Virus record (IMG/VR): IMGVR_UViG_3300032334_001259
Location: 274,436 to 338,435 of that record
Direction: 5' to 3' (one strand)
Length of the DNA stretch: 64,000 bases
How positions within the stretch are numbered: the stretch's first letter is position 1; every line of letters begins with the position of its first letter. The translations under genes were made by a program, and so were the position numbers. Below the pieces are notes generated by a model. That model searched no databases, was not told where the DNA came from, and saw nothing but the letters and a program-made list of their open reading frames with translations. Below are positions 13,368 to 35,660 of the stretch, one piece after another.

Positions 13368-14062
13368 ATTATTTTACTTATATCATCCTTTTTCCATACT
13401 GTCAACTTATTTTTAAACTGTTGCCATTTACAACGGTCTAAATCTGTTTCATAACCCTTAACTTCTAAATACCCACCCAATTCTTCAACATAAAAGTCTG
13501 GAGTATAGTGACTTATTTTACCAGATAAATTTACATAAGCAAATCTTTCAGTGTTTCTTTTCCAATTCCAATTTTGGGAATCCATATATTGTGCAGCTTT
13601 AAGTTCCCAAGTTCCATCTAACAAAACTTCACCAGCAATAGGACTAATGTATTTTATTTTTTTGCATCTACCCGCTTTTGGCATCCATCCAGTTTCATAT
13701 CTTGATAAAATAATTTCTCTATGCCTGTCTCTAAATTTTTGTTTTTTTTCTTCGCTAAAAGTATGCCAATTTGTTTTTCCTAAATTTGCATTACGTAATT
13801 TTTCTTTTTGAATTATAGCACCTTGCGGTCCAAATATTTCATCGTATGTTTTTCCTTTAAGACTTGTTCCATTCGATGAACCTTTAGGATGTCCATTTTT
13901 CCAATAATTATTGCCTAAATCTTTTCTTAAATTTTTTATTTTTGAACGATTTATTTCTTTCATTCCATTACAGGAACTTGTAGATTTACAACAACAATTT
14001 TTTCCATTTTTTAATTTGTATTTTGCTTCTGTTCCGCAACCATAATCACATAAATCTGTCAT
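13331..14062 (-). CDS. putative homing endonuclease, PD-(D/E)XK with basic DNA-binding N-terminus
   Basis: CDYGCG N-terminus, KGKTYDEIFG, GTWELK, YTPDFYV..YLEVKGY. Confidence 0.75.
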   Translation of the reverse strand: MTDLCDYGCGTEAKYKLKNGKNCCCKSTSSCNGMKEINRSKIKNLRKDLGNNYWKNGHPKGSSNGTSLKGKTYDEIFGPQGAIIQKEKLRNANLGKTNWHTFSEEKKQKFRDRHREIILSRYETGWMPKAGRCKKIKYISPIAGEVLLDGTWELKAAQYMDSQNWNWKRNTERFAYVNLSGKISHYTPDFYVEELGGYLEVKGYETDLDRCKWQQFKNKLTVWKKDDISKIMERGQAGNAAHC

Positions 14063-14110
14063 ATAATTATTTATACAAAATAATTAAAAAGGTGCTTTTA
14101 ACCTCTAAAT

Positions 14111-14184
14111 TGGTAGGCGATGACAGAATCGAACTGCCGTAGCCGCCGTGTAAAAGCGGAGTTTTACCATTAAACTAATCGCCC
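14111..14184 (-). tRNA. tRNA-Val(TAC)
   Basis: CCGCT-TTTACAC-GGCGG anticodon arm, AGTTCGATTCT T-arm, ACCA end. Confidence 0.9.
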
Positions 14185-14205
14185 CAATAGTTTATATATA
14201 TCATA

Positions 14206-14793
14206 TTATCCAATTTTGTCAACTATTATTTTAAATAATTTTTCTGCCATTATTTCATGTGCAATTTCATCAGGATGACCATCAGGCAGTTTATGTGGAT
14301 ATGTTATGCTACACATGTTTTCACTATTAAACCAAATATAATTGTTGTCAATATTTTGACAGTAATGGTTAATAGGCATTACATCAAAGAATACATAAGG
14401 AACTTTATTGTGATTAAGATATGCAGAAAAAAGTTTTACTTGATTTATGAACTTTTCATAATAATATAATTCATCATAATAATCATGCCAGAATATATTT
14501 TCAAACTCTGTTAAACCACGGCGATTTGGAATGGTTGTAAATTTTTTACCAGTTTTATTATCTTTAAATTCTACACGACTTGGCTGTGTAAATCCGCAGA
14601 CAACAAAGCTATTATGTAAATCTTTTTCAATTATACTTTGTATAATATGTTCATTACCCATGCCCTCTCGTGCAAGATTAATGACACTTAAGTTTAATTT
14701 TTCAGCCAGCAAATACGGCCAAGAATTAATTGCGTTCTTTAATCCATATCCACTGGTAAAACTACAACCACTACATATTAATTTTGAAAACAT
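14206..14793 (-). CDS. SGNH/GDSL-like protein
   Basis: GCSFTSG, NLAREGMGN, DGHPDEIAH. Confidence 0.7.
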   Translation of the reverse strand: MFSKLICSGCSFTSGYGLKNAINSWPYLLAEKLNLSVINLAREGMGNEHIIQSIIEKDLHNSFVVCGFTQPSRVEFKDNKTGKKFTTIPNRRGLTEFENIFWHDYYDELYYYEKFINQVKLFSAYLNHNKVPYVFFDVMPINHYCQNIDNNYIWFNSENMCSITYPHKLPDGHPDEIAHEIMAEKLFKIIVDKIG

Positions 14794-15587
14794 TCAACAA
14801 TCTTTGGTAATATAAGTTGTAACCAATCAATATGTGCATTGTGACCAGGATGATTACCACATTTTGGATAATCTTTTGCCCATTCGTTAAATGCTGCATC
14901 ACGATACCAATGAGTCCAGTCTAGATCATATAATCCACTATTGATAATATCATTTGGCTGTGGTTTAAAAAGTTCGTCACTAGCACTGCAAAAGAAATAC
15001 GGTATGTTTCTTTGTTTACAAAACATTTCTAGAAACATCATTTCTTTTAATGAATTATAATTATGATAGCTGTAATCACCAGTTACTTTATAAAAACTGT
15101 CACTTGCATGTACAATTCCAATTTCATTTAATTTATTATGTTGTTCAAGAAAAAATTTTCTTTGTTTTTCATCTAATCCGTTTGGGAAAAATTCCATCTT
15201 TTCATCAAAAGATAAACCATGCCATGCGTTAAAATTTATCCAATAATCGTCAATATCAAAACGTGCTGCAACAATTGGATTTTTAACTATAGTATTGTAT
15301 GGGTGCATGTTGCGAATTCGTATTTCACTGCGATGAGTGTATGTCCACATAACCGCAACACATAATTCTTTATCTTTATTATCATTAATTGCTTTTATAA
15401 TACGGCGGCTAATAGTATTATTTGCACCACCTGGTTTAGCAACACAAATATATTCCATATTATACTGCCTTGCTAAAAGAGCACTCCAAGTTTGTTGACT
15501 TGGAGTGTGTTCTGTGCTACTAAATTTATCATCACCTAGTTCACTTCCCCAAGTGAAACTATCACCGCCTGCAATAAGGGTTGGCAT
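14778..15587 (-). CDS. SGNH/GDSL-like protein
   Basis: GDSFTWG, AKPGGAN, NHPGHNAH. Confidence 0.7.
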   Translation of the reverse strand: MPTLIAGGDSFTWGSELGDDKFSSTEHTPSQQTWSALLARQYNMEYICVAKPGGANNTISRRIIKAINDNKDKELCVAVMWTYTHRSEIRIRNMHPYNTIVKNPIVAARFDIDDYWINFNAWHGLSFDEKMEFFPNGLDEKQRKFFLEQHNKLNEIGIVHASDSFYKVTGDYSYHNYNSLKEMMFLEMFCKQRNIPYFFCSASDELFKPQPNDIINSGLYDLDWTHWYRDAAFNEWAKDYPKCGNHPGHNAHIDWLQLILPKIVECFQN

Positions 15588-16201
15588 TAGTCACCTAATA
15601 CTGAACGTGCTTTTTCCCAAAGATGTGTACGTTCTTCAAGACCAATGGTTCCACCATTAATAATCTTTGTGCACTTTACAATGTCACCAGTATCAGCTAC
15701 TTCATTGCAACCATTTTGTTGAAAGAACCAACCAGCACTACGTGCTGCACCTTCTGGTGTAGCAAGATAATCACTGTTTTCTACAAGGTCCATGCCTAAT
15801 GCTTCACCACATGCAGTGTAGTTATTCTTACCAGTTAACTGAATTAAACCACGACCACGAAAACGGAAACCATCGCCGCTGTGTTCATCACCATTACCCA
15901 TACGTGAAGCATAAACACGATTAGCAATCTTTTCTGGTTGCTTTGCAAAATCATTTGGATCTACATCACGGAAATATTTTGGAAATATCTTTGTAAGTGT
16001 TTCTGCTTTGTAGTTTAAATTTTCACTTACAGCACTGAACATACCACTTTCATGTGCACACTGTGCAAGAAACATAGCACAACGAGCGGGTGTATTAATT
16101 TCAAATTCATGCATTGCTTCATTAAGTGCATCACAATATTTCTCTAAATTCTCACCTTTTGCTTGTGGAAAAATTTCTTGTAGTTGTTCAAAAGTTGCCA
16201 T
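15587..16201 (-). CDS. GH19 chitinase-like endolysin
   Basis: FLAQCAHESG, FRGRGLIQLTGKNNY, TKIINGG..GLEER. Confidence 0.92.
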   Translation of the reverse strand: MATFEQLQEIFPQAKGENLEKYCDALNEAMHEFEINTPARCAMFLAQCAHESGMFSAVSENLNYKAETLTKIFPKYFRDVDPNDFAKQPEKIANRVYASRMGNGDEHSGDGFRFRGRGLIQLTGKNNYTACGEALGMDLVENSDYLATPEGAARSAGWFFQQNGCNEVADTGDIVKCTKIINGGTIGLEERTHLWEKARSVLGD

Positions 16202-16254
16202 TTTATATTTCCTTTTTGATTGTTATCAGTATTTACCATTCACCAACCTTCATA

Positions 16255-16260
16255 TAAATA
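16255..16260 (+). promoter_or_regulatory. T4-late-like promoter box (TA)TAAATA, 5 nt before ATG
   Basis: TATAAATA-TCATT-ATG; same spacing at 22622, 23540, 31681(-), 14068(-). Confidence 0.65.
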
Positions 16261-16265
16261 TCATT

Positions 16266-17147
16266 ATGTGTGTTATAGTTGCAAAATATTTTGATAATGT
16301 AGGTTGGGTTGGTGTAAAAAATCGTGATCGCAACTATGTTCCTGATTTAAGTTTTCGTAAAAAGAAAAATAAAAATACAGAAGTATTATATTTTTGGGAT
16401 GATATTACACAATACTGTGAAGGCATGAATGACAGCGGAGTTTGTGTGTTATCTGCAAGCCTTATGGTGCTAGATGATGAAAAAGAAATCACTGTTCGCA
16501 CCAAGACACCAAGCAAAGATGGCGTAAAGATTCAAAAGGCATTGCGACTAACTGATATTAAAGCAGTAGCAATGAGTTTAATTAAACAAAAGCTACCAGG
16601 ATGCACAATTATATTTGATCGTGAAACTTGTTATCTACTTGAAGGTGCATGGGCACCTGGTGGATATGAAGATAAAGATTACAAATATAAGATAGAAGAA
16701 ATACCACATGACGAAACTGTTGCAAGAACTAATCACGGCGTATGGTTAAAGTGGGCAGGATATCAATATAGCAGTGATGACAGTGAAACTGCCAGTGCTA
16801 TAAGCAGTCGCAGTCGTTTAATCATTGCAGAACATATTGCAAAAAATGCTGAAACACCTGCACAACTTATTGATTGGTTAACTAAAAAATATGTTGATAA
16901 CTGGCAATTAAATGCACTACGTCTTACAGATGAAAAGAAAATGATGCGAACAACAGCACAACTTATGTTAGTTCCAAAAGAAAATACAATGTTTGTTCGT
17001 CCAATTCAAAGTAATATTACTTTTAATTTTTGGAAACTTAATGGTAGTGATAGTAAACTTTGGGTAGAATTATTAAGTAATCGTGTGCTACGCAGTGGTG
17101 AAGATGATCCAAGTATTCCTACTAATTTAGGTCATATCACAGACTAA
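16266..17147 (+). CDS. Ntn-hydrolase-like protein (N-terminal Cys)
   Basis: MCVIV...KNRDRNY, EGMNDSG, RTNHG, SRSR. Confidence 0.65.
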   Translation: MCVIVAKYFDNVGWVGVKNRDRNYVPDLSFRKKKNKNTEVLYFWDDITQYCEGMNDSGVCVLSASLMVLDDEKEITVRTKTPSKDGVKIQKALRLTDIKAVAMSLIKQKLPGCTIIFDRETCYLLEGAWAPGGYEDKDYKYKIEEIPHDETVARTNHGVWLKWAGYQYSSDDSETASAISSRSRLIIAEHIAKNAETPAQLIDWLTKKYVDNWQLNALRLTDEKKMMRTTAQLMLVPKENTMFVRPIQSNITFNFWKLNGSDSKLWVELLSNRVLRSGEDDPSIPTNLGHITD

Positions 17148-17392
17148 ACTGGATGCCACATCATACCCCAATCACTATCTACCCAACGTAGGGTAAAGTG
17201 AGTTGCATCTTCTGCTTTATCAAATTCAAAAACGACTTGAAATTTTCCTACAAGCGTTCCATCTTCAAAATATGAAAGTTCTGGATACTTAAAAACATAA
17301 TTATTTTCAAGACAAAATCGTATCATTTCATCAATCCAATAATCTTTAGCTAAAACATGTTGATGTGGAATGTGAACTTTTACTTCTGTCAT
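17144..17392 (-). CDS. small protein, C-terminal 'F..RW' family
   Basis: FEFDKAEDATHFTLRW. Confidence 0.6.
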   Translation of the reverse strand: MTEVKVHIPHQHVLAKDYWIDEMIRFCLENNYVFKYPELSYFEDGTLVGKFQVVFEFDKAEDATHFTLRWVDSDWGMMWHPV

Positions 17393-17408
17393 TTTAAAAC
17401 TTTTTAAT

Positions 17409-17485
17409 TGGTGCCCACGGTCGGATTTGAACCGACACTGTGGCGATTTTAAGTCGCCTTTCTCTACCTGTTGGAATACGTGGGC
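17409..17485 (-). tRNA. tRNA-Leu(TAA) with short variable loop
   Basis: GCCCACG acceptor, GGCGA-CTTAAAA-TCGCC, 5-nt variable region ACAGT, GGTTCAAATCC, ACCA. Confidence 0.88.
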
Positions 17486-17491
17486 ATTAAC

Positions 17492-17908
17492 TTAATCTAC
17501 CACATCCATAGTGGCTTTACCTAATTCTTTATAACCTTTTGCAGTAGGATGGATTTTATCTTTACTCAACCAATCTTTATGTAGTTTAATTGTGCCATCA
17601 TTAAAATCTCTGGCAAGTGCTTCAATATATTCTATGGTTTCAGCACGAGTATCATTAGGTAGTATCCAAATAACATATTGTGCGTCGATACGTTGACGGA
17701 TCAACCAAAGATTTTCATGTGTGTGCATATCTTTAGAATCATTGGTGCTTAAACTTATAATAACAATATTACTTGTCGGAAGTTTTGTGCTGTATGTCCC
17801 AAGAAAATCTTGTGAATTGATACCAACTTTAGCAATAGTCATGCAGTCACGACGAACATCACCAAGACCCTTTGCAATACTGTCACCTATAATCAAACAA
17901 TCTATCAT
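17492..17908 (-). CDS. SGNH/GDSL hydrolase
   Basis: IGDSIA, SLSTND, DKIHPTAKGY. Confidence 0.8.
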   Translation of the reverse strand: MIDCLIIGDSIAKGLGDVRRDCMTIAKVGINSQDFLGTYSTKLPTSNIVIISLSTNDSKDMHTHENLWLIRQRIDAQYVIWILPNDTRAETIEYIEALARDFNDGTIKLHKDWLSKDKIHPTAKGYKELGKATMDVVD

Positions 17909-17925
17909 AATACTTCCTTAATTTA

Positions 17926-18001
17926 TGGTAGGCGTGGCCCGACTCGAACGGACACTAGTGCTCTTATGAGGAGCAGGTACTAACCATTATACGACACGCC
18001 C
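17926..18001 (-). tRNA. tRNA with CAT anticodon (elongator Met or Ile2)
   Basis: TGCTC-CTCATAA-GAGCA; G1-U72; no initiator GGG/CCC stem. Confidence 0.88.
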
Positions 18002-18469
18002 ATGTTTTTTTAACCAAGATTCCCTTAATGCCTTTTTATGTTCTTCACTTTTTGGTTTACCCTTCAATGCAATTCCACCTTTACGACCATTTTCCTTAAG
18101 TTGTTCTGTTGTGAATTTTTTGACATTTTGCCTTCCATTTTCTGCCAATAATTCTTTAGACCAATTTGCTGCATCGTAACCTTTTTTTGCATTTTCTTTT
18201 GTAAAACCACCAACACCACCAAGTTTCATATTATAGTTGTTTCTATTATAAAAGTCAAGTGTTAATTCTTTTTCTTTATTGAACGCTTCATTTTTATTTT
18301 CAGTAGTGAAAAGAATTTCTTTTTTAAAATTTTCCTTACCATAATTTTTAATTGCATTTTTAATAGCAATGCCACTTCCCATATATGAATCATTTACATT
18401 TTCAGTTTTATGAACCCCAATATAATATTTTTCATTAATAGTATTAGTTATTTTATATACAATATACAT
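17987..18469 (-). CDS. Seg-like GIY-YIG homing endonuclease with NUMOD3-like tail
   Basis: YIVYKITN..KYYIGVH..YMGSG..YGKENFKKEIL..YNMKLGG; KPKSEEHKKAL. Confidence 0.85.
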   Translation of the reverse strand: MYIVYKITNTINEKYYIGVHKTENVNDSYMGSGIAIKNAIKNYGKENFKKEILFTTENKNEAFNKEKELTLDFYNRNNYNMKLGGVGGFTKENAKKGYDAANWSKELLAENGRQNVKKFTTEQLKENGRKGGIALKGKPKSEEHKKALRESWLKKHGRVV

Positions 18470-18527
18470 ATGAAACTCTCCATATGTATTTATATAGCGG
18501 CTGGCTTTACTGTCCATTAACTATATA

Positions 18528-18986
18528 TTAACTTTTTTTGACCGTTTTGTCAACTATATTTTTATTTTCTATGAACATTCTATATAATCCAAGTTCACGA
18601 CCAAATGCTTCAATTTCCCAAGGCATGTCCCAATAATTCATATTTGCTTCTTTATAAACTTGCCCCTTATACCGACTTACTTTTTTTCTTTCGTTATATG
18701 ACAATTCACGCTTAACATATTGCTTAACATGAACCATTTCATGTGCAAGAGCAATCAAAATTTTACGTTTGCTAAATGAGGAGTCAACAGTAATAGTATA
18801 TTTTCCACCACCCTCGTTGACACAATATGCTTCGTCACCATGTTTTTTCTGTAGATTGCGTTCAAAGTCAAGCCATAGGTCAACTTTATTTTTTGTTATA
18901 TTAAGATAATCGGCGTAGAACGCCACTGCCCTCTTAATAATATCACGGTTAACATTTTTACATTTACCAGTAATAGTAAGTTGCAT
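18528..18986 (-). CDS. zinc metallopeptidase-like protein (HExxH)
   Basis: LAHEMVHVKQY...PWEIEAFGRE. Confidence 0.75.
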   Translation of the reverse strand: MQLTITGKCKNVNRDIIKRAVAFYADYLNITKNKVDLWLDFERNLQKKHGDEAYCVNEGGGKYTITVDSSFSKRKILIALAHEMVHVKQYVKRELSYNERKKVSRYKGQVYKEANMNYWDMPWEIEAFGRELGLYRMFIENKNIVDKTVKKS

Positions 18987-19035
18987 AGTGAACTCCCCAG
19001 ACACTAACAAAATATAAACATAAATTTGGGCTTTG

Positions 19036-19497
19036 TCAAGCCCAAATTATCTCATCCCAACCTTCTTTCAAATCAGGAACTTCCAAGTTGTCAATCATAG
19101 ACTTCATAACATCCTTTGGAATGCTCTTGCCTACACGACTATCAAGACGGCGTTGCAATTCCTCTGGTTCAGGAGTTGCAAAGAATACACAAATCTTACG
19201 CCATTCTTTTGGAATACGACCAAGTTTAACCTTACGACCTTTGGCAGTCGTGTTGGTTTGATCCCATATAAGGGTCTTGTCCAAGTTGATAGCACTTTGC
19301 ACTTGACCATCCACAAACTTTTGTGCATAGCCAATAGCACGGCTGAAAATCTCGTTATAGGTCTTGTTGCTTTGTGCTGCAACACGGTCAATATAATCAT
19401 CGCTTGATGCAATAATTACATCATCAAAGTCTTGGTTCTTTATCCATGTTGACTTACCAGAACCTGGTACACCAACTAACATATAAAGCGTGGTCAT
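19036..19497 (-). CDS. polynucleotide kinase-like P-loop protein (PseT kinase half)
   Basis: GVPGSGKST, SSDD, WDQTN...R, RRLDSR..K.IP. Confidence 0.8.
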   Translation of the reverse strand: MTTLYMLVGVPGSGKSTWIKNQDFDDVIIASSDDYIDRVAAQSNKTYNEIFSRAIGYAQKFVDGQVQSAINLDKTLIWDQTNTTAKGRKVKLGRIPKEWRKICVFFATPEPEELQRRLDSRVGKSIPKDVMKSMIDNLEVPDLKEGWDEIIWA

Positions 19498-19736: not shown

Positions 19737-19888
19737 ATTGTATTCCACTTATCTATAATTGCTGTTACAATCAAATAGATAAAAGAAGTAATTCCAAGAA
19801 TAAAGAACGCTTCAACCGTATTATATTTTAATGCAGTAAGAATACCATCTGCAATAAAAACTGCCAACACACTTGTCCAAAAGTTCAT
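19733..19888 (-). CDS. small membrane protein
   Basis: Two hydrophobic segments; 4-nt overlaps with neighbours. Confidence 0.55.
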   Translation of the reverse strand: MNFWTSVLAVFIADGILTALKYNTVEAFFILGITSFIYLIVTAIIDKWNTI

Positions 19889-20355
19889 ATGAAATTTCCT
19901 TCTGCTACTTGTAACACACGAACACCACACGCACGGATTGCATCAACAACCTGCTGACGATCATCAAACCATAGATAAGGCTCGCCATAATCCTTGCGGA
20001 TTTGTTCAAGCAATTCTACCTTGACGATGCTATCCTTGCGATAGTCTTTCTCTGCTCGCATATACAGTTTGTCCCAATAGAAATCGTTATCACGCAACCA
20101 CTTTTCAGTAACTTCACGATTTTCTTCACCACGTCCACTACAAAATAAACGAATAATTTTATCTTCATACTTAGGGTGGTTCACATTCAAAAATGTCAGT
20201 GCATCCCAGATAAACTTAATATCAGCATGGACTGTATCGTTAGCCATGCCAGCGTTCCAAGCTGCCCAATTTTTAGGCTTACTTGCAACATACTGACGAC
20301 GATGGTCAACGTTAGCCATAGTGCCATCAATGTCAAAAACGATAACTTTGTTCAT
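19885..20355 (-). CDS. HAD polynucleotide 3'-phosphatase (PseT phosphatase half)
   Basis: FDIDGT, SGR, LYMR..D.RKDSIVK, FDDRQQVV, LQVAEGNF. Confidence 0.85.
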   Translation of the reverse strand: MNKVIVFDIDGTMANVDHRRQYVASKPKNWAAWNAGMANDTVHADIKFIWDALTFLNVNHPKYEDKIIRLFCSGRGEENREVTEKWLRDNDFYWDKLYMRAEKDYRKDSIVKVELLEQIRKDYGEPYLWFDDRQQVVDAIRACGVRVLQVAEGNFI

Positions 20356-20465
20356 AATTGCCTCCATCTAACCCAATATAACACAAAAATAGTGATTGTC
20401 AAGGGTTATTTTTCACTTGACAAAGCCTAAAAATGTGTTATTTTACAGGTATATAGGAGAACCAT

Positions 20466-21355: not shown

Positions 21356-21409
21356 AAATAAAAAAATTAAAACTTTTATTTACAGTTACAATATTATATA
21401 ATTACCTTT

Positions 21410-22624
21410 ATGAATAATTGCAAACCACTTCGTAAATGTCTTTGCTGTGATAGTAATGACCTCAAACTTACATTAGATTTAGGTTCTCAACCTCTTGCCA
21501 ATAGTTTCAAGGCAACAGCAATAGAACGTGAAGAAACATATCCACTTGCTGTAAATTACTGTCCACATTGCCATCATCTGCAATTAACCCATGCAGTTGA
21601 TGCTAATATAATTTTTAAAGATTATGTATATGTAAGTGGAACATCACTTACTATGCAAGAATATTTTAAGTGGTTTGCTGCATTTGTTATGGAATATTTT
21701 CAAGATGTTCCGCCAAAGCGTGTGCTTGAAATTGGCTGTAATGATGGCACACAGTTAAACTATTTTAAGAAATATGGATTAGAAACGTGGGGCATTGATC
21801 CTGCGGAAAACATTTATCCAATCAGCAGCAAAAATCATAACATTATTTGTGACTTTTTATCTCAACATGCTTTGGATAAACTCAAGCGTCCAGTAGATAT
21901 TATATACGCACAAAATGTTTTTGCGCATCAAGACAATCCACAACAATTCCTTGAACTTTGCAAATCTGTGATGAACCCTAACACACTGTTGTTCATACAG
22001 AATAGTCAAAGTGATATGATTCAAAATAATGAATTTGATACAATCTATCATGAACATAGAAATTTCTTTAGCATTAGTAGCCTTAATACCCTTGCTAACC
22101 ATGTTGGACTACACCTTATTGATGTAGTAAAGGGTACAATTCACGGTGGTAGTAATATCTTTGTGTTCAGCATAGATGATGAATGTCCTGCACGTGTCAA
22201 GGGTTATATGGATTGGGAACGTATCCAAGGATTATATAATTACAAAACCTATCAGAATTGGGCAGATGGTGCTAAACGTACAGTTAATGATTTAAGCATT
22301 GTGTTAGATGCACAGCGCAAAGCACACAATCGTGTGATTGTAGGTTATGGTGCGCCAGCCAAAGGTAATACGCTATTGAACTTTGGTAATATATCACTTG
22401 ATTTTATTATAGATGATAATCCATTAAAGCAACACAAATATACACCTGGTATGAGTATTCCTGTTGTTCCTATTGAACACTTACAGAAGTATGTTGGTGT
22501 AGACATTTGTTTTGTGCCGCTTGCATGGAACTTTTTTGATGAAATTGTAGATCGTCTTAAAAAGGTTCGTAATAATAGTGGTGATGTATTTGTAAGATAC
22601 TTTCCAAGTATCCAGATACAATAA
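21410..22624 (+). CDS. NDP-sugar C-methyltransferase (TcaB9/NovU-like)
   Basis: CxxC...LDLGSQPLAN...CxxC, EIGCNDG, FDTIYHEH, HGGS, GYGAPAKGNTLL, LAWNF. Confidence 0.9.
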   Translation: MNNCKPLRKCLCCDSNDLKLTLDLGSQPLANSFKATAIEREETYPLAVNYCPHCHHLQLTHAVDANIIFKDYVYVSGTSLTMQEYFKWFAAFVMEYFQDVPPKRVLEIGCNDGTQLNYFKKYGLETWGIDPAENIYPISSKNHNIICDFLSQHALDKLKRPVDIIYAQNVFAHQDNPQQFLELCKSVMNPNTLLFIQNSQSDMIQNNEFDTIYHEHRNFFSISSLNTLANHVGLHLIDVVKGTIHGGSNIFVFSIDDECPARVKGYMDWERIQGLYNYKTYQNWADGAKRTVNDLSIVLDAQRKAHNRVIVGYGAPAKGNTLLNFGNISLDFIIDDNPLKQHKYTPGMSIPVVPIEHLQKYVGVDICFVPLAWNFFDEIVDRLKKVRNNSGDVFVRYFPSIQIQ

Positions 22625-22632
22625 ATATCTAC

Positions 22633-23529
22633 ATGCGAATTAGTGAAATTATTGTTGAAGCACCAACTGATGTAAGTCGTCGTGGATTTCTTAAAGGATT
22701 AGCAAGCATTGCTGCATCTACTGCAATGCCACAAAATGCTGTTGCAAAAATATTAAAGGCAGTTCCTAAATCACAAATTGAAATATTAGACGATCTTTTT
22801 AAAAATGTACATCCAATTGTACTAGACACCGTAGGCAGTGAATATGGCAGGGTGGGAGTACACGGAGAACACGCTATAAGTGCTTTTACTAACTCAGAAT
22901 ATGATGCTTTACATAGATTGGTAAGACCTCTTTATAAAGAACAAGGTTTTGCAACTGAACGTGATGCAGTAAATGCATTAAAAAAAATAGCAACTATGAG
23001 CAGCAAAACTACTAATGAATATTACAAGGTATTTGAATACCTACTTGGAAGACCACTTGAAGTAAGAAAATTAGAAAACATACTGGCATCACATGGCACC
23101 AATGTAGACAGTTTTTTTGGTCAAATGATGAAGAATGAACCATTTGAAGAAGCGTTTATGCAATTATCAAATGAGGCTTATATGAATATTGGTGGCACAC
23201 GTTATTTTGAACCTATCGCAAATTTAAAACCGCTACCACCAAATTGGGCAACGGCACTTGGACAGTCAGTAAAACGATTTGCAAATAATGCAGGACAAGT
23301 AGCAAGATTTACAGGTAAAAACTATCTTGATAAAAAACTTCCTGATTTATCCCCTCAACAACTTGACCAGAGAAACGCAACTCAAGACAGGGTAGATAAA
23401 GAAAAAAAAGAACCACAAAAACCAAAAGAACTTGAAAAACCAAAAGATGATGAAAAGAAAATTACATCATATGGCGGTAGTGCAACTGGTAAGTTTGTAA
23501 AACCAATTGCTGCAAAAGTTAACGCTTAA
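22633..23529 (+). CDS. hypothetical late protein with Tat-like motif
   Basis: MRISEIIVEA then SRRGFLKGLASIAA; TAAATA box. Confidence 0.7.
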   Translation: MRISEIIVEAPTDVSRRGFLKGLASIAASTAMPQNAVAKILKAVPKSQIEILDDLFKNVHPIVLDTVGSEYGRVGVHGEHAISAFTNSEYDALHRLVRPLYKEQGFATERDAVNALKKIATMSSKTTNEYYKVFEYLLGRPLEVRKLENILASHGTNVDSFFGQMMKNEPFEEAFMQLSNEAYMNIGGTRYFEPIANLKPLPPNWATALGQSVKRFANNAGQVARFTGKNYLDKKLPDLSPQQLDQRNATQDRVDKEKKEPQKPKELEKPKDDEKKITSYGGSATGKFVKPIAAKVNA

Positions 23530-23550
23530 TAATATTCCATAAATATCTGT

Positions 23551-24264
23551 ATGCGTTTTACACAATTCAAACCAATAATTCTCGAAGGTGGAAATATGTT
23601 TAAGGGAACAACATCCTATGATCAGGCTGTTGTTCCACAAGTATTAAAGATAATTAATGATGCGCTAAGTGGTGCAAGACTTAAAGTTACGCCAGTTGGT
23701 AGTGGTGCAAATCCTGTCAAGGGTAAAATCAGTAACGATTTTGATGTTATGACAGATGAAGATGCTGTTAAGGCTTTCTTTAAAACCAATGATGCCAAGG
23801 AAGCACGTAAGAAATTAGCAGAATATCTTAAGAATCTTGGATTTCAAACTGCACAAAGTGGAATAATTGTGCATGTGTTGGTTCCTGTAGCCAATATGGG
23901 TGTGCAAGCTGATATTATGGTAACACCACAAGCAGATGCAATTGCCAAGTTTCATACTCATAATATTCCACAAAATAGCCCATTCAAAGGTAAGAACAAA
24001 GTTCTGACCATGGGAGCAATCGCTAAGGCCAAAGGTTATATGTTTAGCCCATGGCAAGGGTTGTTTAAACGCACACCAGATGGTAAAAAAGGTGAACTTG
24101 TAAGTAATGATATTGAAACAGTTGCTAAAGTATTACTTGGCAATTCCGCAACTGCCGCTGACTTGGGTAGTGTAGAAAGCATTCTTAAAAAACTTCCACG
24201 TGCAGATGCAGATAAACTTCTCGCAACTCTACGTGCTGATCCAAATTGGGAAGAACTTAAATGA
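23551..24264 (+). CDS. hypothetical late protein, possible Pol-beta-type nucleotidyltransferase fold
   Basis: VGSG...SNDFDVM and QADIM (GS, DxD, third D). Confidence 0.5.
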   Translation: MRFTQFKPIILEGGNMFKGTTSYDQAVVPQVLKIINDALSGARLKVTPVGSGANPVKGKISNDFDVMTDEDAVKAFFKTNDAKEARKKLAEYLKNLGFQTAQSGIIVHVLVPVANMGVQADIMVTPQADAIAKFHTHNIPQNSPFKGKNKVLTMGAIAKAKGYMFSPWQGLFKRTPDGKKGELVSNDIETVAKVLLGNSATAADLGSVESILKKLPRADADKLLATLRADPNWEELK

Positions 24265-26002: not shown

Positions 26003-26551
26003 TTATTTATTAGGATATCTTCCTAATTTTTCAAAACATTCAGTCAATCTTTGGATTTGATTAAGACAATCCCAAAGCGCATGATGTTTACTATTACCAG
26101 GTATAAAATGTTCTGGAACCATCTTATAAATGGTTCTTGCATCTAAAACTTGCCAGAACTTCCATGGACTTTGTAATCCAAGTTCACGATTACAATCTTC
26201 TAAAATTACATAATCAAAGCCAGCACCATTTGCCCAATAACGGTCTGTTCCACTTGCCCAACTATTCAATGCAATCATTGCATCACGAAGTGGCAATCTA
26301 TCATCAGGATGAAATGCTTCATCACGGGTTTCTTTTGCTTGTTCAGCCCACCATTGAACTGTATCATCGTTTATTTCACGATTTTGATTATCTACTTCAA
26401 CACGACAATAAAAATAGTCTAAATCTCTTGGGTCAGCAATAGTTCTGTAATCAGCATAGCGGTCAAAAGTTACGCCAGCAATGGTTAACACCGTGGCTTT
26501 TGGAGTATTACCAAGTGTTTCAATATCAATCATAATGTCACGATGTTTCAT
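26003..26551 (-). CDS. DEDDh 3'-5' exonuclease (Rv2179c/DexA-like)
   Basis: DIETLG, WANGAGFD, DARTI, HHALWDC. Confidence 0.85.
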   Translation of the reverse strand: MKHRDIMIDIETLGNTPKATVLTIAGVTFDRYADYRTIADPRDLDYFYCRVEVDNQNREINDDTVQWWAEQAKETRDEAFHPDDRLPLRDAMIALNSWASGTDRYWANGAGFDYVILEDCNRELGLQSPWKFWQVLDARTIYKMVPEHFIPGNSKHHALWDCLNQIQRLTECFEKLGRYPNK

Positions 26552-26637
26552 AGTCCAAATATACCATAGTTCAGGTATTTGTCAAGCTATTTTTTACATA
26601 TTTTTGGTAAATATATACAGGTATTCTTGGAGCCAAC

Positions 26638-29363: not shown

Positions 29364-29629
29364 TGGCTATAGATGCAATACAAAAACAAGATTTAACAGA
29401 AGCACGTAATCGTGAAGTAGAACTACTTAAAAGTGGTGATAAAACAGCAAGTCACTTCTTATATTGGTATGCTTGGTTTTGGGCTGTAACCAGTGCGGCA
29501 TACTTCTTTACAGTTACTCTTGTTCCAATTACTGATAATGGTCAGCACTTTGCAGATATTATTCTTGGATTCTTGCTTGGAACAGCAGTAGCAACTATAA
29601 TTGGTTACTTCTACGGTAGTAGTAAGTAA
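29363..29629 (+). CDS. small 2-TM membrane protein (holin-like)
   Basis: ILGFLLGTAVATIIGYFYGSS. Confidence 0.55.
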   Translation: MAIDAIQKQDLTEARNREVELLKSGDKTASHFLYWYAWFWAVTSAAYFFTVTLVPITDNGQHFADIILGFLLGTAVATIIGYFYGSSK

Positions 29630-31675
29630 TTACTTGGTGCTGGTTCTGTAAACAGTATCCCAACCAGCGCCTGGTGGGTTTGCAGCCATTTCTTCACAAC
29701 GTTCAATCCACATATCATAATATCCATCCATTTGCCCGTCAAATTGACCTTTAATTTTTTTACAAATTTCTATTGCACTTGTAAATCTTTGAGCACGATA
29801 GTCATCCATCATGTGTTTATGATTAGTTTTAGCAGCAAGATATGCAATTCTATCACTGCGTTGTTCTAATACTGTAAAGATATCAACACCTTCTTTTTTA
29901 CCTTTAACCGCAATGCAGTCTAATTCAAGTGTAAAGTAATCATCTTTTACATATTCATTTGTCTTTGGTCCAATAACCATAGCAACATGATATGGTTTAC
30001 TTTGCCCTTCTAAACGTGAAGCAAGATTAACGCCATCACCAAGACAAGTATAATCAAATCGCTGGCTACTACCCATGTTACCAACGACGACAGTAGCAGT
30101 GTTGATACCAAGTCCCATTCCAAAAGGTGGGACTCCCTCTTTGGCAACTTCTTCATTAAACGCATTTAAACTTCCTAACATTTGTAGTGCTGTCTTTACA
30201 GCGTTCTTGGCATGATCTGCATCATCAAGTGGTGCGTTCCAAAATGCCATTTGTGCATCACCGATATATTTGTCAAGTGTGCCTTCATTCTCTAATATCT
30301 TAGCAGTCATCGCTGTCATATAGCGGTTCATTATTTTGGTAAGACCTTGAACGTCACTACCGTAATGCTCAGAAATGCTAGTAAAACCCCTAACATCGGT
30401 AAATATAATTGATAACTCACGTGACTCTCCTCCCAATGCTAATAGTTCTGGATTCTTTTGAAGTTTTTCAACCATTGCAGGTGAAAGATAAGTTCCAAAT
30501 TGTTTCTTTATTTGTTGCTTTTGTAAGAACTCACTGACGAACTTAACACCGTAGGCATGCAAAGCGACCAAGATGATTCCAGCAACAGGAGCGGTTGCGT
30601 CCCATAACTGTAAAGCGTGATTAAACTGATAGAAAGAAAAAGCAATACTGCCGCCGACCAATACAATAACCGAACCAAGCCCAACATATACCCACCTCGT
30701 CAAGAATAATAATAACAGTCCACCAATTACGAGTGCAATAAGTTCTGCACCTTCTGCATAACTTGGACGTTCAATGTTAACCTTATTTGCCAACGTAGCA
30801 ATAATCTTTGCTTGTATATCTTGTGGATATACTGCACCAACAGCAGTAGGAACAGGGTTTGCAATACCAGCAGCACTAACACCAACAATAACAATTGCGC
30901 CATCAAACTTTTCTGGCATATTTGTAACGCTTACTTGTTTGTGTTGTTGACTTAAATCAATCCATACACGACCTAAACTATCAGTTGTGAATATATTTTT
31001 ACCAATACCAAGTTTATCAATTCCAAGTTCATTTAACTTAACTTTCATATTCTTTTCATTATAAAGAACACGAAGTGTTTCAAGACCGATTGTAGGATAA
31101 AGTTTACCACCACTGCCAACAAGCAGCGGAATACGACGATTAACACCATCTATTTCAGGAAATACGTTTGTTGTTCCAACACCAATTGCACTATTTTCTA
31201 AATCTGGAATGTTGGCAATAACACCAGGATAATTGTAAATTCTATCAATAAAATTACTGTTGACAATGGCGGCACCATTTGGGCGTGGTGTGTTCTTGCC
31301 TACGCTACTTGGAATATTACTTAAAATTACTGGATGATTTTTAAGAGTTTCAGCAAGTGCAGCGTCACCACCTTGGCGGTCTGCTTCTGGCATTAACACT
31401 GTCCAAACAACAATGCTTGCACCACGTGCATAAATGTCGTTAATTATATCCGCATATATCTGTCTATTAAACGGCCATTGTCCATACTTGTTAAGTGCGG
31501 CTTCATCAATATTAACTGTATAAATTGGGTTTTCAGTTTGTGTTTTATTTGTGATAAGTTGGTCAAAGTATTTTAACTTGACGCTTTCAACAAATGTAGG
31601 TGATGAAACTTTTATGGCAACTACGATTGCCAATGTTATGAGTGCAGTCCATGGGCTTAATAGAATTTTTTTCAT
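29630..31675 (-). CDS. CHASE2-domain class III adenylate/guanylate cyclase
   Basis: IDEAAL..GQWPFNR and DGVNRRIPL (CHASE2); 3 TM; FTDVRGFT, DKYIGDAQMAFWNAP, GNMGS..RFDYT..GDGVNLASRLEG, VKGK. Confidence 0.93.
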   Translation of the reverse strand: MKKILLSPWTALITLAIVVAIKVSSPTFVESVKLKYFDQLITNKTQTENPIYTVNIDEAALNKYGQWPFNRQIYADIINDIYARGASIVVWTVLMPEADRQGGDAALAETLKNHPVILSNIPSSVGKNTPRPNGAAIVNSNFIDRIYNYPGVIANIPDLENSAIGVGTTNVFPEIDGVNRRIPLLVGSGGKLYPTIGLETLRVLYNEKNMKVKLNELGIDKLGIGKNIFTTDSLGRVWIDLSQQHKQVSVTNMPEKFDGAIVIVGVSAAGIANPVPTAVGAVYPQDIQAKIIATLANKVNIERPSYAEGAELIALVIGGLLLLFLTRWVYVGLGSVIVLVGGSIAFSFYQFNHALQLWDATAPVAGIILVALHAYGVKFVSEFLQKQQIKKQFGTYLSPAMVEKLQKNPELLALGGESRELSIIFTDVRGFTSISEHYGSDVQGLTKIMNRYMTAMTAKILENEGTLDKYIGDAQMAFWNAPLDDADHAKNAVKTALQMLGSLNAFNEEVAKEGVPPFGMGLGINTATVVVGNMGSSQRFDYTCLGDGVNLASRLEGQSKPYHVAMVIGPKTNEYVKDDYFTLELDCIAVKGKKEGVDIFTVLEQRSDRIAYLAAKTNHKHMMDDYRAQRFTSAIEICKKIKGQFDGQMDGYYDMWIERCEEMAANPPGAGWDTVYRTSTK

Positions 31676-31698
31676 GGTAATATTTACCCAAGAAAAAA

Positions 31699-31722
31699 CC
31701 CCGTAAATTTCTTTACGGGGTC
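31699..31722. terminator. intrinsic terminator-like hairpin
   Basis: ACCCCGTAAA-TTTC-TTTACGGGGT with U-tract on minus strand. Confidence 0.7.
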
Positions 31723-31730
31723 TTATTAAA

Positions 31731-33608: not shown

Positions 33609-33723
33609 AATGTTTTCCTTTTATAAGTTCTTAAAACTAACCAACTATGTGGTAACTATGTTTTAGGTAATAATACTTATTATACACACTCTGCATAAAA
33701 AAATAAAATTAATTTTTTTAAAA

Positions 33724-33857
33724 AAGTGCGGGTAGGATTTATACCTACAATTTGATGGTATTAACAAGCTACAGATTTAACAGACCCTTGCTTTCTAGTT
33801 CCTTTATTTCCATCATGCCGATACTCCAATACGTGTCCTGCCCACGCCGCCGCACTT
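33724..33857 (-). ncRNA. tRNA-like structured ncRNA A (134 nt, no anticodon arm)
   Basis: Terminal stem AAGTGCGG/CCGCACTT, D-like arm CGTG-GGCAGGA-CACG, T-like arm GTAGG-TATAAAT-CCTAC; own TTGACA-N17-TATAAA promoter; T-tract after. Confidence 0.7.
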
Positions 33858-33887
33858 ATCTCTTTATATATTATTGTATTAGTGCTG

Positions 33888-34889
33888 TCAATGTATTTGT
33901 TGTAAGTTTTTTAAAAAACTATTTGTGCATTTTTCCCAAGTATAATCTTTGCTTATTTTATGTACATTTTTGCGATTACAGTCTAGTGCATATTCAATGG
34001 CAATTTGTAAATTGTCATCCATAGCACCATTTACACCATTTATTATAATATCAGTTGGACCTGTAACTGGATATGCTGCAATTGGTGTTCCACATGCCAT
34101 TGCTTCTAACATTACCACACCAAAGGTATCAGTCTTACTTGGAAATACAAATACATCTGAGTTAGCATAATATTCAGCAAGTGCATCACCATGTTTATAA
34201 CCTGTAAAAATTACGTCGTTATATTTCTTTTTTAATTCTGCCAAGTATGGACCATCACCAACTAATATTTTTGTTCCGTCAGTTTTTAGACTGCAAAAAT
34301 CATCTAAACCTTTTTCTATGCTTGCACGACTTACGCAAAGTAATATAGGTTTAGTTGCTTGATTTGACTTACGTTTTTTGGGATTAAATATTTTAGTATC
34401 AACTCCACGATTCCATACAGCAAGACGTTCAAATCCACGTCCTTGTAATTCTTGTCGCATAGTTTCATTTGTAACTAAAACCCGTGTGCTAAACTTATGA
34501 AACCAACGAATAAACCAATAACCCCAATCTACGGGTATATTAAAATATTTGTTAAAGTATTCTGGAAATTTTGTATGATAACTTGTGTTATGTGGAATAC
34601 TGCGCTTATCTACTTTGCAATACCAACGTGCGGCAAATCCTAATGGACCCTCTGTAGCAATATGAATAGCATCTGGCTTAAACGATTCAATCATGGGACC
34701 AACACGCCAAATATTAAGTGTAAGTTTTATTTCTGGATAACCTGGCGCTGGCACAGTCTTAAATTGACTAGGTTCAATAACCTGAACTATATGTCCAAGT
34801 CGTTCTAACTCTGCAACAGTGTTTATAAGAGTTGTAACAACACCATTTACACTTGGTGCGTATGTATCAGTTACCAGTGAGATTCGCAT
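33888..34889 (-). CDS. GT4 glycosyltransferase
   Basis: TDTYAPSVNGVV, HIATEGPLG, RGVD, VFPSKTDTFGVVMLEAMACG. Confidence 0.92.
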   Translation of the reverse strand: MRISLVTDTYAPSVNGVVTTLINTVAELERLGHIVQVIEPSQFKTVPAPGYPEIKLTLNIWRVGPMIESFKPDAIHIATEGPLGFAARWYCKVDKRSIPHNTSYHTKFPEYFNKYFNIPVDWGYWFIRWFHKFSTRVLVTNETMRQELQGRGFERLAVWNRGVDTKIFNPKKRKSNQATKPILLCVSRASIEKGLDDFCSLKTDGTKILVGDGPYLAELKKKYNDVIFTGYKHGDALAEYYANSDVFVFPSKTDTFGVVMLEAMACGTPIAAYPVTGPTDIIINGVNGAMDDNLQIAIEYALDCNRKNVHKISKDYTWEKCTNSFLKNLQQIH

Positions 34890-35616
34890 TTTTATATTTA
34901 ATTATAAACCAATGACCATTATAATCTTCAACTAATGCTGTGCAACTTTCAACCCAATCACCGCAATTCATATATTTTATATCACCTATTTCACGTATAT
35001 TTGCGTGATGTATATGTCCGCATATAATTCCATTTGCACCACGTGTTCTCGCAAAACTAGCAAGATTATCTTCAAAATCACCAATAAAGTTTACTGCCTT
35101 TTTAACTTTATATTTTGCCCAAGCACTTAAACTCCAATATGGTAACTTAAATAAATTTCTAATTCTTGCTATAACAACATTTAATGCAATTGTTAAATCA
35201 TATGCCCAACTACCAATATGACTTAACCATTTCATATTTTTAATAACAACATCAAACTGGTCTCCATGCATAACAATATATTTTTTACCATCTAAGCTGG
35301 CATGTGTAATATTATCCACGAGACAAATATTACCAAAGCTATACTCTCCAAATGTTCGTAAAAATTCATCGTGATTTCCTGGCAAATAATAGACTTGAAC
35401 GCCTTTTCTTGCCAAACGCATAAGTTTTTGGATTACATCATTATGATGTTGCGGCCAGTAAAAACTTTTAGCCATTGCCCAACCATCAATTATGTCACCA
35501 ACAAGATACAGACGTTCACACTCAAAAGTTTTAATAAATTCAAGCAAATCATTTGCTTGACTCATACGAGTGCCTAAATGCACATCGCTTATAAAGACAC
35601 TACGATAATAATTCAT
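34867..35616 (-). CDS. LpxH-like (UDP-2,3-diacylglucosamine hydrolase family) metallophosphoesterase
   Basis: SDVHLG, GDIIDGW, PGNHD, HGDQFD, CGHIH, NCGDWVES. Confidence 0.88.
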   Translation of the reverse strand: MNYYRSVFISDVHLGTRMSQANDLLEFIKTFECERLYLVGDIIDGWAMAKSFYWPQHHNDVIQKLMRLARKGVQVYYLPGNHDEFLRTFGEYSFGNICLVDNITHASLDGKKYIVMHGDQFDVVIKNMKWLSHIGSWAYDLTIALNVVIARIRNLFKLPYWSLSAWAKYKVKKAVNFIGDFEDNLASFARTRGANGIICGHIHHANIREIGDIKYMNCGDWVESCTALVEDYNGHWFIIKYKNANLTGN

Positions 35617-35660
35617 ATAAAATATTTACCTGACCATTTATGTAAGTTTTATGATGCTTT

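What the first reader, a model, noticed from the sequence alone, without database searches (positions are those of the whole stretch)
14062..35630. Late promoter box fixed about 5 nt before ATG: probable leaderless late mRNAs
Seen: TAAATA-N5-ATG at 14062(-), 16266, 22633, 23551 and 31675(-); TAATTA-N5-ATG at 9867(-) and 21410; N4-6 variants at 11887, 35616, 39771 and 55001. None has an SD in the gap, whereas sigma70-driven genes have clear GGAG sites. T4 late transcripts start a few nt after TATAAATA (established), so initiation would fall at or next to the AUG. Inference: a switch to leaderless translation late in infection, possibly linked to phage bS21.
Basis: partly seen in the sequence, partly recalled or inferred. 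Interest (0 to 1): 0.62.

Follow-up and report, generated by a model that had tools for sequence, protein, structure and literature searches.

The report
Promoter boxes abutting start codons: leaderless genes
In this 338-kb environmental jumbo phage, the T4-type late-promoter box TAAATA sits either exactly 5 bases before the ATG with no ribosome-binding site, or about 19 bases before it with one, so roughly 30 late genes are probably made from mRNAs that begin at the start codon; ordinary sigma70-type promoters show the same layout, so this is not a late-only switch.

Summary
Across the genome, TAAATA-N5-ATG occurs 19 times, and all 19 ATGs open ORFs of at least 60 aa (about 3.9 expected, p 2e-8). 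No spacing from N8 to N14 occurs before a called gene. A second mode at N15-24 carries a GGAG/AGGA site.

TAAATA behaves as a promoter:
- It is the rarest hexamer of its composition and is 6-7 fold depleted inside genes on both strands.
- A gp55 late-sigma homolog is encoded.
- The box precedes terminase, portal, baseplate and tail-fibre genes.

In T4 the box ends at -6, so N5 puts the A of ATG at +1.

The layout recurs in relatives. It is found before TerL orthologs (37 of 72 at exactly N5, including a TAAGTA variant) and in two distant relative contigs. T4, PBECO4 and PA5oct lack it.

The "late switch" idea fails. TTGACA-N17-TAnnnT promoters also sit exactly 6 bases before ATG at 15 genes, again placing A at +1. 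These include gp44 and gp47 homologs.

The bS21 link is unsupported. The gene is SD-led, and published E. coli data tie leaderless translation to loss of bS21.

No RNA data could be obtained, so transcript 5' ends remain inferred.

The parts
14060..14073 (-). Late box TAAATA (14068-14073), N5, ATG 14060-14062 of gene 13331-14062 (243 aa, endonuclease-like). Lies just downstream of tRNA-Val.
16255..16268 (+). TAAATA-N5-ATG of gene 16266-17147 (293 aa). The upstream neighbour is on the opposite strand, so the promoter must lie in the 64-nt gap.
22622..22635 (+). TAAATA-N5-ATG of gene 22633-23529 (298 aa). The TAA of the box is the stop codon of gene 21410-22624.
23540..23553 (+). TAAATA-N5-ATG of gene 23551-24264 (237 aa). 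One of only two class A genes with a possible SD-led in-frame start downstream (codon 15).
31673..31730 (-). Terminator-like hairpin with a T-run, ending about 9 nt before TAAATA (31681-31686). Then N5 and the ATG 31673-31675 of gene 29630-31675 (681 aa, phrog_35576). There is no room for a leader.
34887..34900 (-). TAAATA-N5-ATG of gene 33888-34889 (333 aa, glycosyltransferase-like).
35614..35628 (-). TAAATA-N6-ATG of gene 34867-35616 (249 aa, metallophosphoesterase-like).
11885..11897 (-). TAAATA-N4-ATG of gene 11408-11887 (159 aa).
39769..39781 (-). TAAATA-N4-ATG (second ATG of ATGATG) of gene 39244-39771. Lies directly after tRNA-Gln.
54999..55013 (-). TAAATA followed by ATGATG (N3 or N6) of gene 54678-55004. 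Preceded by a hairpin.
2680..2694 (-). TAAATA-N6-ATG of gene 1147-2682 (511 aa).
9183..9198 (-). TAAATA-N7-ATG of gene 7233-9185 (650 aa).
9865..9880 (-). TATAATTACCTGT-ATG. Reads as TAATTA-N5 or as sigma70-type TATAAT-N7 (TTGCGA lies 17 nt upstream). Promoter class is ambiguous.
21397..21412 (+). TATAATTACCTTT-ATG of gene 21410-22624 (404 aa, methyltransferase-like). Same ambiguity as the 9867 site.
59322..59346 (-). Leadered late promoter: TAAATA-N16 with GGAG, ATG 59322-59324. Head of the same-strand gene run that contains bS21.
45021..45049 (-). Leadered late promoter: TAAATA-N20 with AGGAG, gene 44628-45023.
39198..39221 (-). Leadered late promoter: TAAATA-N15 with GAGGA, gene 38751-39200.
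62372..62401 (+). Leadered late promoter: TAAATA-N21 with GGGAG, gene 62399-63157 (esterase/lipase-like).
48049..48085 (-). Sigma70-type TTGACA-N17-TATAGT, N6, ATG of gene 47023-48051 (342 aa). Predicted leaderless.
26549..26585 (-). Sigma70-type TTGACA-N17-TATATT, N6, ATG of gene 26003-26551 (182 aa). Predicted leaderless.
7234..7270 (-). Sigma70-type TTGACA-N17-TATGAT, N6, ATG of gene 7024-7236 (70 aa).
20365..20402 (-). Sigma70-type TTGACA-N17-TATATT, N7, ATG of gene 19885-20367 (160 aa).
18515..18553 (-). Sigma70-type TTGACA-N18-TAATAT, N7, ATG 18515-18517 of gene 17987-18517.
56693..56941 (-). Phage bS21 gene (82 aa from the ATG at 56941). It has its own SD (AAGAGGAAAATAATG) and no adjacent promoter box.

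Best explanation
TAAATA is the -10-type box of late promoters read by host RNA polymerase carrying the phage's gp55-like sigma. Transcription starts about 6 bases after the box.

The phage places this box in only two ways:
- Class A (27 genes at N4-6, 33 at N3-7): the box ends 5 (+/-1) bases before ATG, so the mRNA begins at the AUG. It would be translated as a leaderless message with no SD.
- Class B (44 genes at N15-24, mode N19): the mRNA starts at or 1-5 bases before a GGAG/AGGA site, giving a 10-19 nt leader.

Spacings N8-14 would give leaders too short for an SD yet no longer 5'-AUG. They are absent before called genes.

Sigma70-type promoters follow the same rule, with N6 for leaderless or N19-35 with an SD. 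Leaderless initiation is therefore a general expression mode of this phage, not a late switch. About 47-53 of roughly 385 genes use it.

Shown: motif statistics, depletion, the gp55 homolog, the gene classes driven, and conservation in relatives. Inferred: the exact 5' ends and the mode of translation.
For: Evidence that TAAATA is a promoter:
- There are 193 copies against about 520-690 expected, the rarest of 15 same-composition hexamers.
- Inside CDS it is depleted on both strands against codon-shuffled genes: sense 44 vs 262+/-17, antisense 42 vs 318+/-17. That points to a DNA-level signal.
- 105 of 193 copies lie within 60 nt upstream of a called start, in sense orientation.
- A gp55 homolog lies at G000 160877-161725(-) (phrog_12791 E 1e-78, phrog_234 E 4e-23; phmmer to T4 gp55 2.5e-6), beside gp46/gp47 homologs.
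- Driven genes include TerL, a head-tail adaptor, an endolysin-like gene, portal, baseplate wedge and tail fibres.
- TAAATA is also the rarest such hexamer in T4 and PBECO4.

Evidence on geometry:
- The T4 late box starts at -13, hence ends at -6 (PMC2988020). N5 therefore puts A of ATG at +1.
- Sigma70-type boxes (-12..-7 by established numbering) peak one base further out, at N6 (15 sites, p 8e-8). This is the shift expected if +1 is the A in both classes.
- Position -1 is a pyrimidine in 14 of 17 N5 genes (p 0.002). The predicted +1 of class B is a purine in 33 of 44 (p 6e-4).

Evidence that there is no leader option:
- The spacing histogram is bimodal, with zero called genes at N8-14.
- Six class A boxes directly follow terminator-like hairpins. 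Others sit in short divergent gaps.
- Only 2 of 27 have a downstream SD-led in-frame start, the same rate as background.
- N-termini agree with homologs. The gp44 and gp47 homologs align to T4 from residues 5 and 13. TerL relatives match from residue 1.

Evidence from conservation:
- In 72 distinct TerL upstream regions (TerL 60-91% identical), information content is confined to -11..-6 and -1.
- 22 have TAAATA and 15 have TAAGTA at exactly N5, and 16 more fall at N4-8. Only 4 have an SD-like word.
- In 719 kb of related loci, N5 gives 83 ORF-opening sites.
- Two distant relative contigs (GC 41% and 44%) repeat the N5 peak, 10 of 79 and 9 of 58 boxes, with an empty N10-14.

Controls: T4 peaks at N28 and PBECO4 at N25-37, while PA5oct is diffuse. 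None shows an N5 or sigma70-N6 peak.
Against: - No transcript 5' end was seen, because no RNA run was listed for this phage.
- The +1 position is borrowed from T4, whose gp55 is 185 aa against 282 aa here.
- No gp45-type clamp was found, and gp33 was not tested. The initiation complex may therefore differ from T4's.
- The box at -11..-6 occupies the place an SD would, so an RNA-level role is not formally excluded.
- The first 40 nt of class A genes are not significantly less structured than in other genes (p 0.075).
- A at +4, proposed as a leaderless recognition base, is not enriched.
- The host is unknown, so its competence for leaderless translation is unknown.
- My gene calls are home-made. 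The main histograms, however, do not depend on them.
Confidence: 0.7

Rival explanations
1. One reading: leaderless translation is switched on late in infection, and phage bS21 adapts ribosomes to it.
For: - bS21 is encoded.
- It lies in a same-strand gene run headed by a TAAATA promoter at window 59346-59322, so it is probably expressed late. Chen et al. report late expression for other bS21 phages (PMC9723584).
- In two distant relatives the leaderless layout is mainly at late boxes, with sigma70-N6 at only 2 sites each.
- The phage also encodes an IF1 homolog.
Against: - In this genome, 15-20 sigma70-type promoters are also leaderless-type. They include replication and recombination genes (gp44 and gp47 homologs).
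- 44 late promoters keep an SD.
- bS21 itself uses an SD.
- In E. coli, leaderless cI mRNA is favoured on ribosomes that lack uS2 and bS21 (PMC10491246).
Confidence: 0.1
2. At N5, TAAATA acts in the RNA as a non-SD ribosome-binding or enhancer element on polycistronic messages. It sits where an SD would. Under this model it is not acting as a promoter.
For: - The box occupies -11..-6, the usual SD position.
- 13 of 33 class A boxes overlap the end of the upstream same-strand gene. In 7 of them the TAA is its stop codon, so read-through mRNA would contain the box.
Against: - The hexamer is equally depleted on the antisense strand of genes.
- The same hexamer sits at N15-24 in front of a true SD.
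- Sigma70-type boxes show the parallel N6 peak.
- Several boxes follow terminators or lie in divergent gaps.
- The peak is sharp at a single spacing.
Confidence: 0.1
3. The boxes are real promoters, but the adjacent ATG is not the start used. Translation begins further downstream on a leadered message.
For: - Start codons were assigned by sequence only.
- Gene 23551 has a possible SD-led ATG at codon 15.
- 42652(-) lies inside a longer ORF.
Against: - Only 2 of 27 have such an alternative, which is the background rate.
- All 19 N5 ATGs open long ORFs.
- TerL orthologs match from residue 1 and keep the ATG at N5.
Confidence: 0.07
4. A chance product of AT-rich intergenic sequence, or of TAA stop codons lying close to the next ATG.
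For: - The genome is 35.5% GC.
- 7 class A boxes use their TAA as a stop codon.
Against: - p 2e-8, and same-composition hexamers show no peak.
- 20 of 33 boxes are fully intergenic.
- The peak recurs in relatives with 41-44% GC.
Confidence: 0.02

Closest known systems
T4 late promoters (TATAAATA, gp55/gp33/gp45) and the ATAAATA late motif predicted in Rak2-like jumbo phages CBB and GAP32
   Same: - Same core box, with no -35 element.
- A gp55 homolog is present.
- The box precedes structural genes and is avoided elsewhere in the genome.
   Different: - In T4 the box sits about 28 nt before ATG, and in PBECO4 25-37 nt, giving ordinary leaders. Here the spacing is 5 or about 19 nt.
- gp55 is 282 aa here against 185 aa in T4.
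- No gp45-type clamp was detected. The CBB authors reported the same for their phage.
Leaderless transcripts of Thermus phages (phiYS40, Lalka27a) and '-10 region adjacent to ORF' genes of Deinococcus-Thermus
   Same: The promoter -10 element abuts the start codon, so the A or G of the initiator codon is the 5' end of the mRNA. Many phage genes are expressed this way (bioRxiv 10.64898/2026.04.20.719267; PMC12340547).
   Different: - Those cases have mapped 5' ends and a host phylum known to use leaderless mRNAs. Here the 5' ends are inferred and the host is unknown.
- The promoter type here is T4/gp55-like.
- The phage lineage is related to PA5oct and Rak2-like phages of Proteobacteria.
Lambda cI mRNA from PRM
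   Same: A phage mRNA that starts at its AUG and is translated without an SD (PMC10491246).
   Different: That is a single regulatory gene in a genome that otherwise uses leaders. Here about one gene in eight is involved, including virion and packaging genes.
bS21-encoding huge phages of freshwater Bacteroidetes (Chen et al. 2022, PMC9723584)
   Same: A large environmental phage carrying bS21, probably in a late transcription unit.
   Different: - bS21 is not in the TerL/capsid/portal block here: bS21 lies at 331 kb, TerL at 58 kb and portal at 148 kb.
- About half of the genes carry an SD, unlike the SD-poor Bacteroidetes setting.
- That paper does not mention promoters, UTRs or leaderless mRNAs.

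Membership tests
T4-type (gp55-dependent) late promoter | Phage encodes a gp55-family late sigma | tested here: met
   phrog_12791 E 1.3e-78 and phrog_234 E 3.5e-23. phmmer with T4 gp55 gives 2.5e-6. The gene sits beside gp46/47 homologs. It is 47% identical to the PA5oct late sigma.
T4-type (gp55-dependent) late promoter | TATAAATA-like box with no conserved -35 element | tested here: met
   TAAATA is invariant by selection, with A favoured just before it (7 of 10 in class B). Columns -31..-14 are flat.
T4-type (gp55-dependent) late promoter | Precedes virion, packaging and lysis genes | tested here: met
   TerL, head-tail adaptor, endolysin-like, portal, baseplate wedge and tail fibres.
T4-type (gp55-dependent) late promoter | gp45 sliding clamp and gp33 co-activator present | tested here: not met
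   gp45 gave no phmmer hit with T4 gp45 and no PF02916 or PF09116 hit. gp33 was not tested. Divergent analogues are not excluded.
T4-type (gp55-dependent) late promoter | Transcripts start about 6 nt after the box, late in infection | not testable with these tools
   No RNA run was listed.
Leaderless genes (-10 box abutting the start codon) | -10 element ends 5-7 nt before the start codon | tested here: met
   Late box at N5 (19 sites) and sigma70-type box at N6 (15 sites).
Leaderless genes (-10 box abutting the start codon) | No SD, and AUG as the start codon | tested here: met
   23 of 27 have no SD word. 19 of the 20 N5 sites use ATG, and the single GTG lies deep inside an open frame.
Leaderless genes (-10 box abutting the start codon) | mRNA 5' end mapped at the A of AUG, and translation from that AUG | not testable with these tools
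   No RNA or ribosome data are available.
bS21-phage late translation takeover (Chen et al. 2022) | bS21 inside the conserved TerL/capsid/portal block | tested here: not met
   bS21 is at G000 331 kb, TerL at 57-59 kb and portal at 148-150 kb.
bS21-phage late translation takeover (Chen et al. 2022) | SD-poor (Bacteroidetes-type) initiation context | tested here: not met
   G is enriched at -11..-8 (0.31-0.36). 186 of 385 genes have an SD word of at least 4 nt.

The most novel reading that the evidence does not exclude
This phage lineage has rebuilt T4-type late transcription so that many late mRNAs start at their AUG. It also carries its own initiation parts (bS21 and an IF1 homolog, whose own gene has a TAAGTA-N4-ATG layout). 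Under this reading those parts make host ribosomes accept 5'-AUG messages in a host that would otherwise translate them poorly. That would be a phage-imposed change in the mode of translation initiation.
Probability: 0.1. Interest if true: 0.8.

Novelty: new variant of a known kind. Interest (0 to 1): 0.5.

Why it matters
T4-type late promoters and leaderless phage mRNAs are each well known. Full-text searches found no description of gp55-type promoters abutting start codons.

If the 5' ends are confirmed:
- A clade of widespread environmental jumbo phages would express terminase, adaptor, lysis and many other genes without a ribosome-binding site.
- That affects gene calling in such phages, because start codons can be fixed by the box.
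- It bears on host inference.
- It bears on ideas about why large phages carry initiation factors and ribosomal proteins.

The strict either-0-or-at-least-10-nt leader rule is also a clean natural data set on what bacterial ribosomes tolerate at the 5' end of an mRNA.

Tried and rejected
- RNA evidence: the look-up of sequencing runs listed no RNA run.
- Close DNA relatives among cultured phages: none found by megablast.
- A window gene as query in IMG/VR found only the same phage. TerL was used instead.
- Host inference failed:
  - bS21 found no bacterial relative in genome contigs.
  - Hsp20 found only a 22% identical archaeal match.
  - The protein atlas returned only viral bS21 clusters.
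  - Among phage records, bS21 weakly matched Methylophilales phage Melnitz only.
- The variable-gap pattern search on PA5oct, PBECO4 and T4 was truncated. It was replaced by fetching the genomes.
- 5' structure of class A genes was not significantly lower.
- A(+4) was not enriched.
- TAATTA as a second late box is not supported statistically.
- IF3 and S1 homologs were not found.
- The phiYS40 paper (PMC1885378) is not held. It is cited only through the Lalka preprint.
- A Markov-simulation control timed out. It was replaced by binomial, same-composition and codon-shuffle controls.

Full report
**What the sequence is.** The window is the last 64 kb of a 338,435-bp virus record with direct terminal repeats and 35.5% GC. 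It encodes homologs of T4 gp43, gp44, gp46, gp47 and gp55. The gp55 homolog (282 aa) matches the PHROG families for late sigma factors (E 1e-78 and 4e-23). Its nearest cultured relatives are PA5oct and MIJ3 (47% identity) and the Rak2-like phages (40%). bS21 is present at window 56693-56941(-). No near-identical cultured phage exists in the collection. The host could not be inferred.

Without using any gene calls, TAAATA-Nx-ATG across the genome shows a peak of 19 at N5. All 19 ATGs open ORFs of at least 60 aa. A second broad peak lies at N15-21, with 18 sites at N19. TAAATA has only 193 copies, so about 3.9 ATGs are expected at any one spacing, giving p 1.8e-8 for N5. None of the other 14 hexamers of the same composition shows such peaks, apart from frame-shifted readings of the same sites.

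I made a simple gene call of 385 genes covering 95% of the genome. On that call the spacing histogram is strictly bimodal:
- 33 genes at N3-7, with 17 at N5.
- None at N8-14.
- 44 genes at N15-24.

23 of the 27 N4-6 genes have no SD-like word. 32 of the 44 N15-24 genes have one, placed 4-10 nt after the box. TAAATA is the single commonest hexamer at -11..-6 of all gene starts. TAATTA is not enriched on its own. The two cited TAATTA sites share TATAATTACCT and may be sigma70-type TATAAT boxes at N7.

**The box is a promoter.** Four lines of evidence support this.
- TAAATA is three times rarer than Markov expectations, and it is the rarest hexamer of its composition.
- Against codon-shuffled versions of the genes it is depleted 6-fold in the sense strand and 7.5-fold in the antisense strand. 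A signal read in RNA would not be purged from the antisense strand, whereas a promoter would be.
- 105 of the 193 copies lie within 60 nt upstream of a gene, in sense orientation.
- The genes behind it include the large terminase, a head-tail adaptor, an endolysin-like protein, portal, baseplate wedge and several tail fibres.

The same hexamer is the rarest of its class in T4 and PBECO4. An ATAAATA late motif has been predicted for the Rak2-like phages CBB and GAP32 (PMC5259590).

**Why N5 means leaderless.** The T4 review numbers the first T of the late box as -13 (PMC2988020). The 8-bp box therefore ends at -6, and five bases separate it from +1. TAAATA-N5-ATG then puts the A of the start codon at +1.

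An internal check came from the sigma70-type promoters. TTGAC.-N17-19-TAnnnT sites are followed by ATG at exactly N6 in 15 ORF-opening cases, against 6 or fewer at any other spacing (p 8e-8). A second mode at N19-35 carries an SD. By established numbering the sigma70 -10 hexamer ends at -7, so N6 again puts A at +1. The one-base offset between the two promoter classes is what a shared requirement of '+1 = A of AUG' predicts. A ribosome-binding role for TAAATA would not predict it.

Further points:
- Position -1 is a pyrimidine in 14 of 17 N5 genes (p 0.002).
- The predicted +1 of the leadered class is a purine in 33 of 44 (p 6e-4).
- Six class A boxes follow terminator-like hairpins within about 10-40 nt, including window 31675(-).
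- Others lie in short gaps between divergent genes.
- Only 2 of 27 have an alternative SD-led in-frame start.
- Start positions agree with homologs.

**Conservation.** 80 IMG/VR loci carry TerL at 60-100% identity. Their upstream regions are otherwise unalignable. Of 72 distinct sequences:
- 22 have TAAATA and 15 have TAAGTA at exactly N5.
- 16 more have the box at N4-8.
- Only 4 contain an SD-like word.
- Information content is confined to -11..-6 and -1.

So the box changed (A to G) in one sub-clade while the spacing stayed the same. Across 719 kb of these loci, N5 gives 83 ORF-opening sites.

Two distant relatives were fetched as whole contigs, at 151 and 172 kb with GC 41% and 44%. They repeat the N5 peak (10 and 9 sites) and the empty N10-14 zone. 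Three other relatives show weaker excess.

T4 (mode N28), PBECO4 (N25-37) and PA5oct (diffuse) have no N5 peak and no sigma70-N6 peak. The compact layout is therefore a trait of this environmental lineage, not of gp55 phages in general. The sigma70-N6 class is strong in this genome (15 sites) but weak in the two distant relatives (2 each).

**What does not hold.**
- Leaderless layout is not confined to late promoters here. The sigma70-type leaderless set includes the gp44 and gp47 homologs.
- More late promoters keep an SD (44) than lack one (27-33).
- The probable major capsid gene (assigned by position only, not scanned against families) is SD-led inside an operon.
- bS21 has a standard SD and sits in a gene run headed by a leadered late promoter. 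Late expression is therefore plausible, as reported for other bS21 phages (PMC9723584).
- Nothing ties bS21 to leaderless starts. The published cI work links better leaderless translation to ribosomes lacking uS2 and bS21 (PMC10491246).
- The phage also encodes an IF1 homolog whose own gene shows TAAGTA-N4-ATG. No IF3 or S1 homolog was found.

**Comparison with the known.** A promoter -10 abutting the start codon, giving 5'-AUG mRNAs, is established for Deinococcus-Thermus (PMC12340547) and for Thermus phages. In those phages most transcripts start at the initiator codon (Lalka27a, citing phiYS40). It is also established for lambda cI. The box itself is the T4 late promoter. What is new is the combination, its strict two-state spacing, and its conservation in a clade of environmental jumbo phages. 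Full-text searches for leaderless together with T4-like or late-promoter terms found no prior description. The PA5oct and CBB papers do not mention it.

**Limits.** No RNA data were available, so 5' ends and the mode of translation are inferred. The +1 distance is carried over from T4 to a longer gp55 homolog, in a genome where no gp45-type clamp was found. The gene calls are my own. The host is unknown.

Noticed in passing
G000 266710-266892 (-), outside the window: The phage encodes an IF1 homolog (PF01176, E 1e-21, 72 aa). Its gene has TAAGTA-N4-ATG with no SD. The TAA of the box is the stop codon of the upstream gene.
   Followed up: partly
window 55059-59346 (-): bS21 lies in a same-strand run headed by a leadered TAAATA promoter. 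The order is a 120-aa, a 546-aa and a 129-aa ORF (no family hits), then bS21, then a dehydrogenase-like gene (phrog_9582). Hsp20-like and ClpS/protease-adaptor-like genes follow.
   Followed up: partly
window 17987-18553 (-): One ORF has two candidate starts with different signals. ATG 18517 sits 7 nt after a sigma70-type promoter with no SD. In-frame ATG 18469 sits 17 nt after a TAAATA box and has a GGAGAG site. This may give early and late isoforms 16 residues apart.
   Followed up: no
L029, L040-L048, L054-L071 and others (upstream of TerL): A sub-clade of relatives uses ATAAGTA instead of ATAAATA at the same N5 position. This implies a shift in late-sigma specificity with the spacing kept.
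   Followed up: partly
G000 160877-161725 (-): The gp55 homolog is 282 aa against 185 aa in T4. Only residues 165-267 match the general late-sigma family, and no gp45-type clamp is detectable. The extra N-terminal part might replace the clamp/co-activator link.
   Followed up: no
window 12304-18001, 39794-39869, 53428-53502: Seven tRNA genes, all on the minus strand: Arg-tct, Ser-gct, Val-tac, Leu-taa, Met-cat, Gln-ttg and Thr-tgt. Two class A boxes directly follow a tRNA gene (14062 and 39771).
   Followed up: no
PBECO4 NC_027364.1 157828-167654 (+): The string TAAATATAGTATAATG (box-N7-ATG), with one-base variants, recurs about every 1.2 kb. It looks like a tandem family of paralogous genes, each with its own late box.
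   Followed up: no
genome-wide, e.g. G000 79644, 213985, 214278, 317967: Many leadered sigma70-type promoters share a near-identical leader ending in TGATGGAGAA-N5-7-ATG. They also carry an extended -10 (TGTGnTATAnT), which suggests a duplicated early promoter-leader cassette.
   Followed up: no
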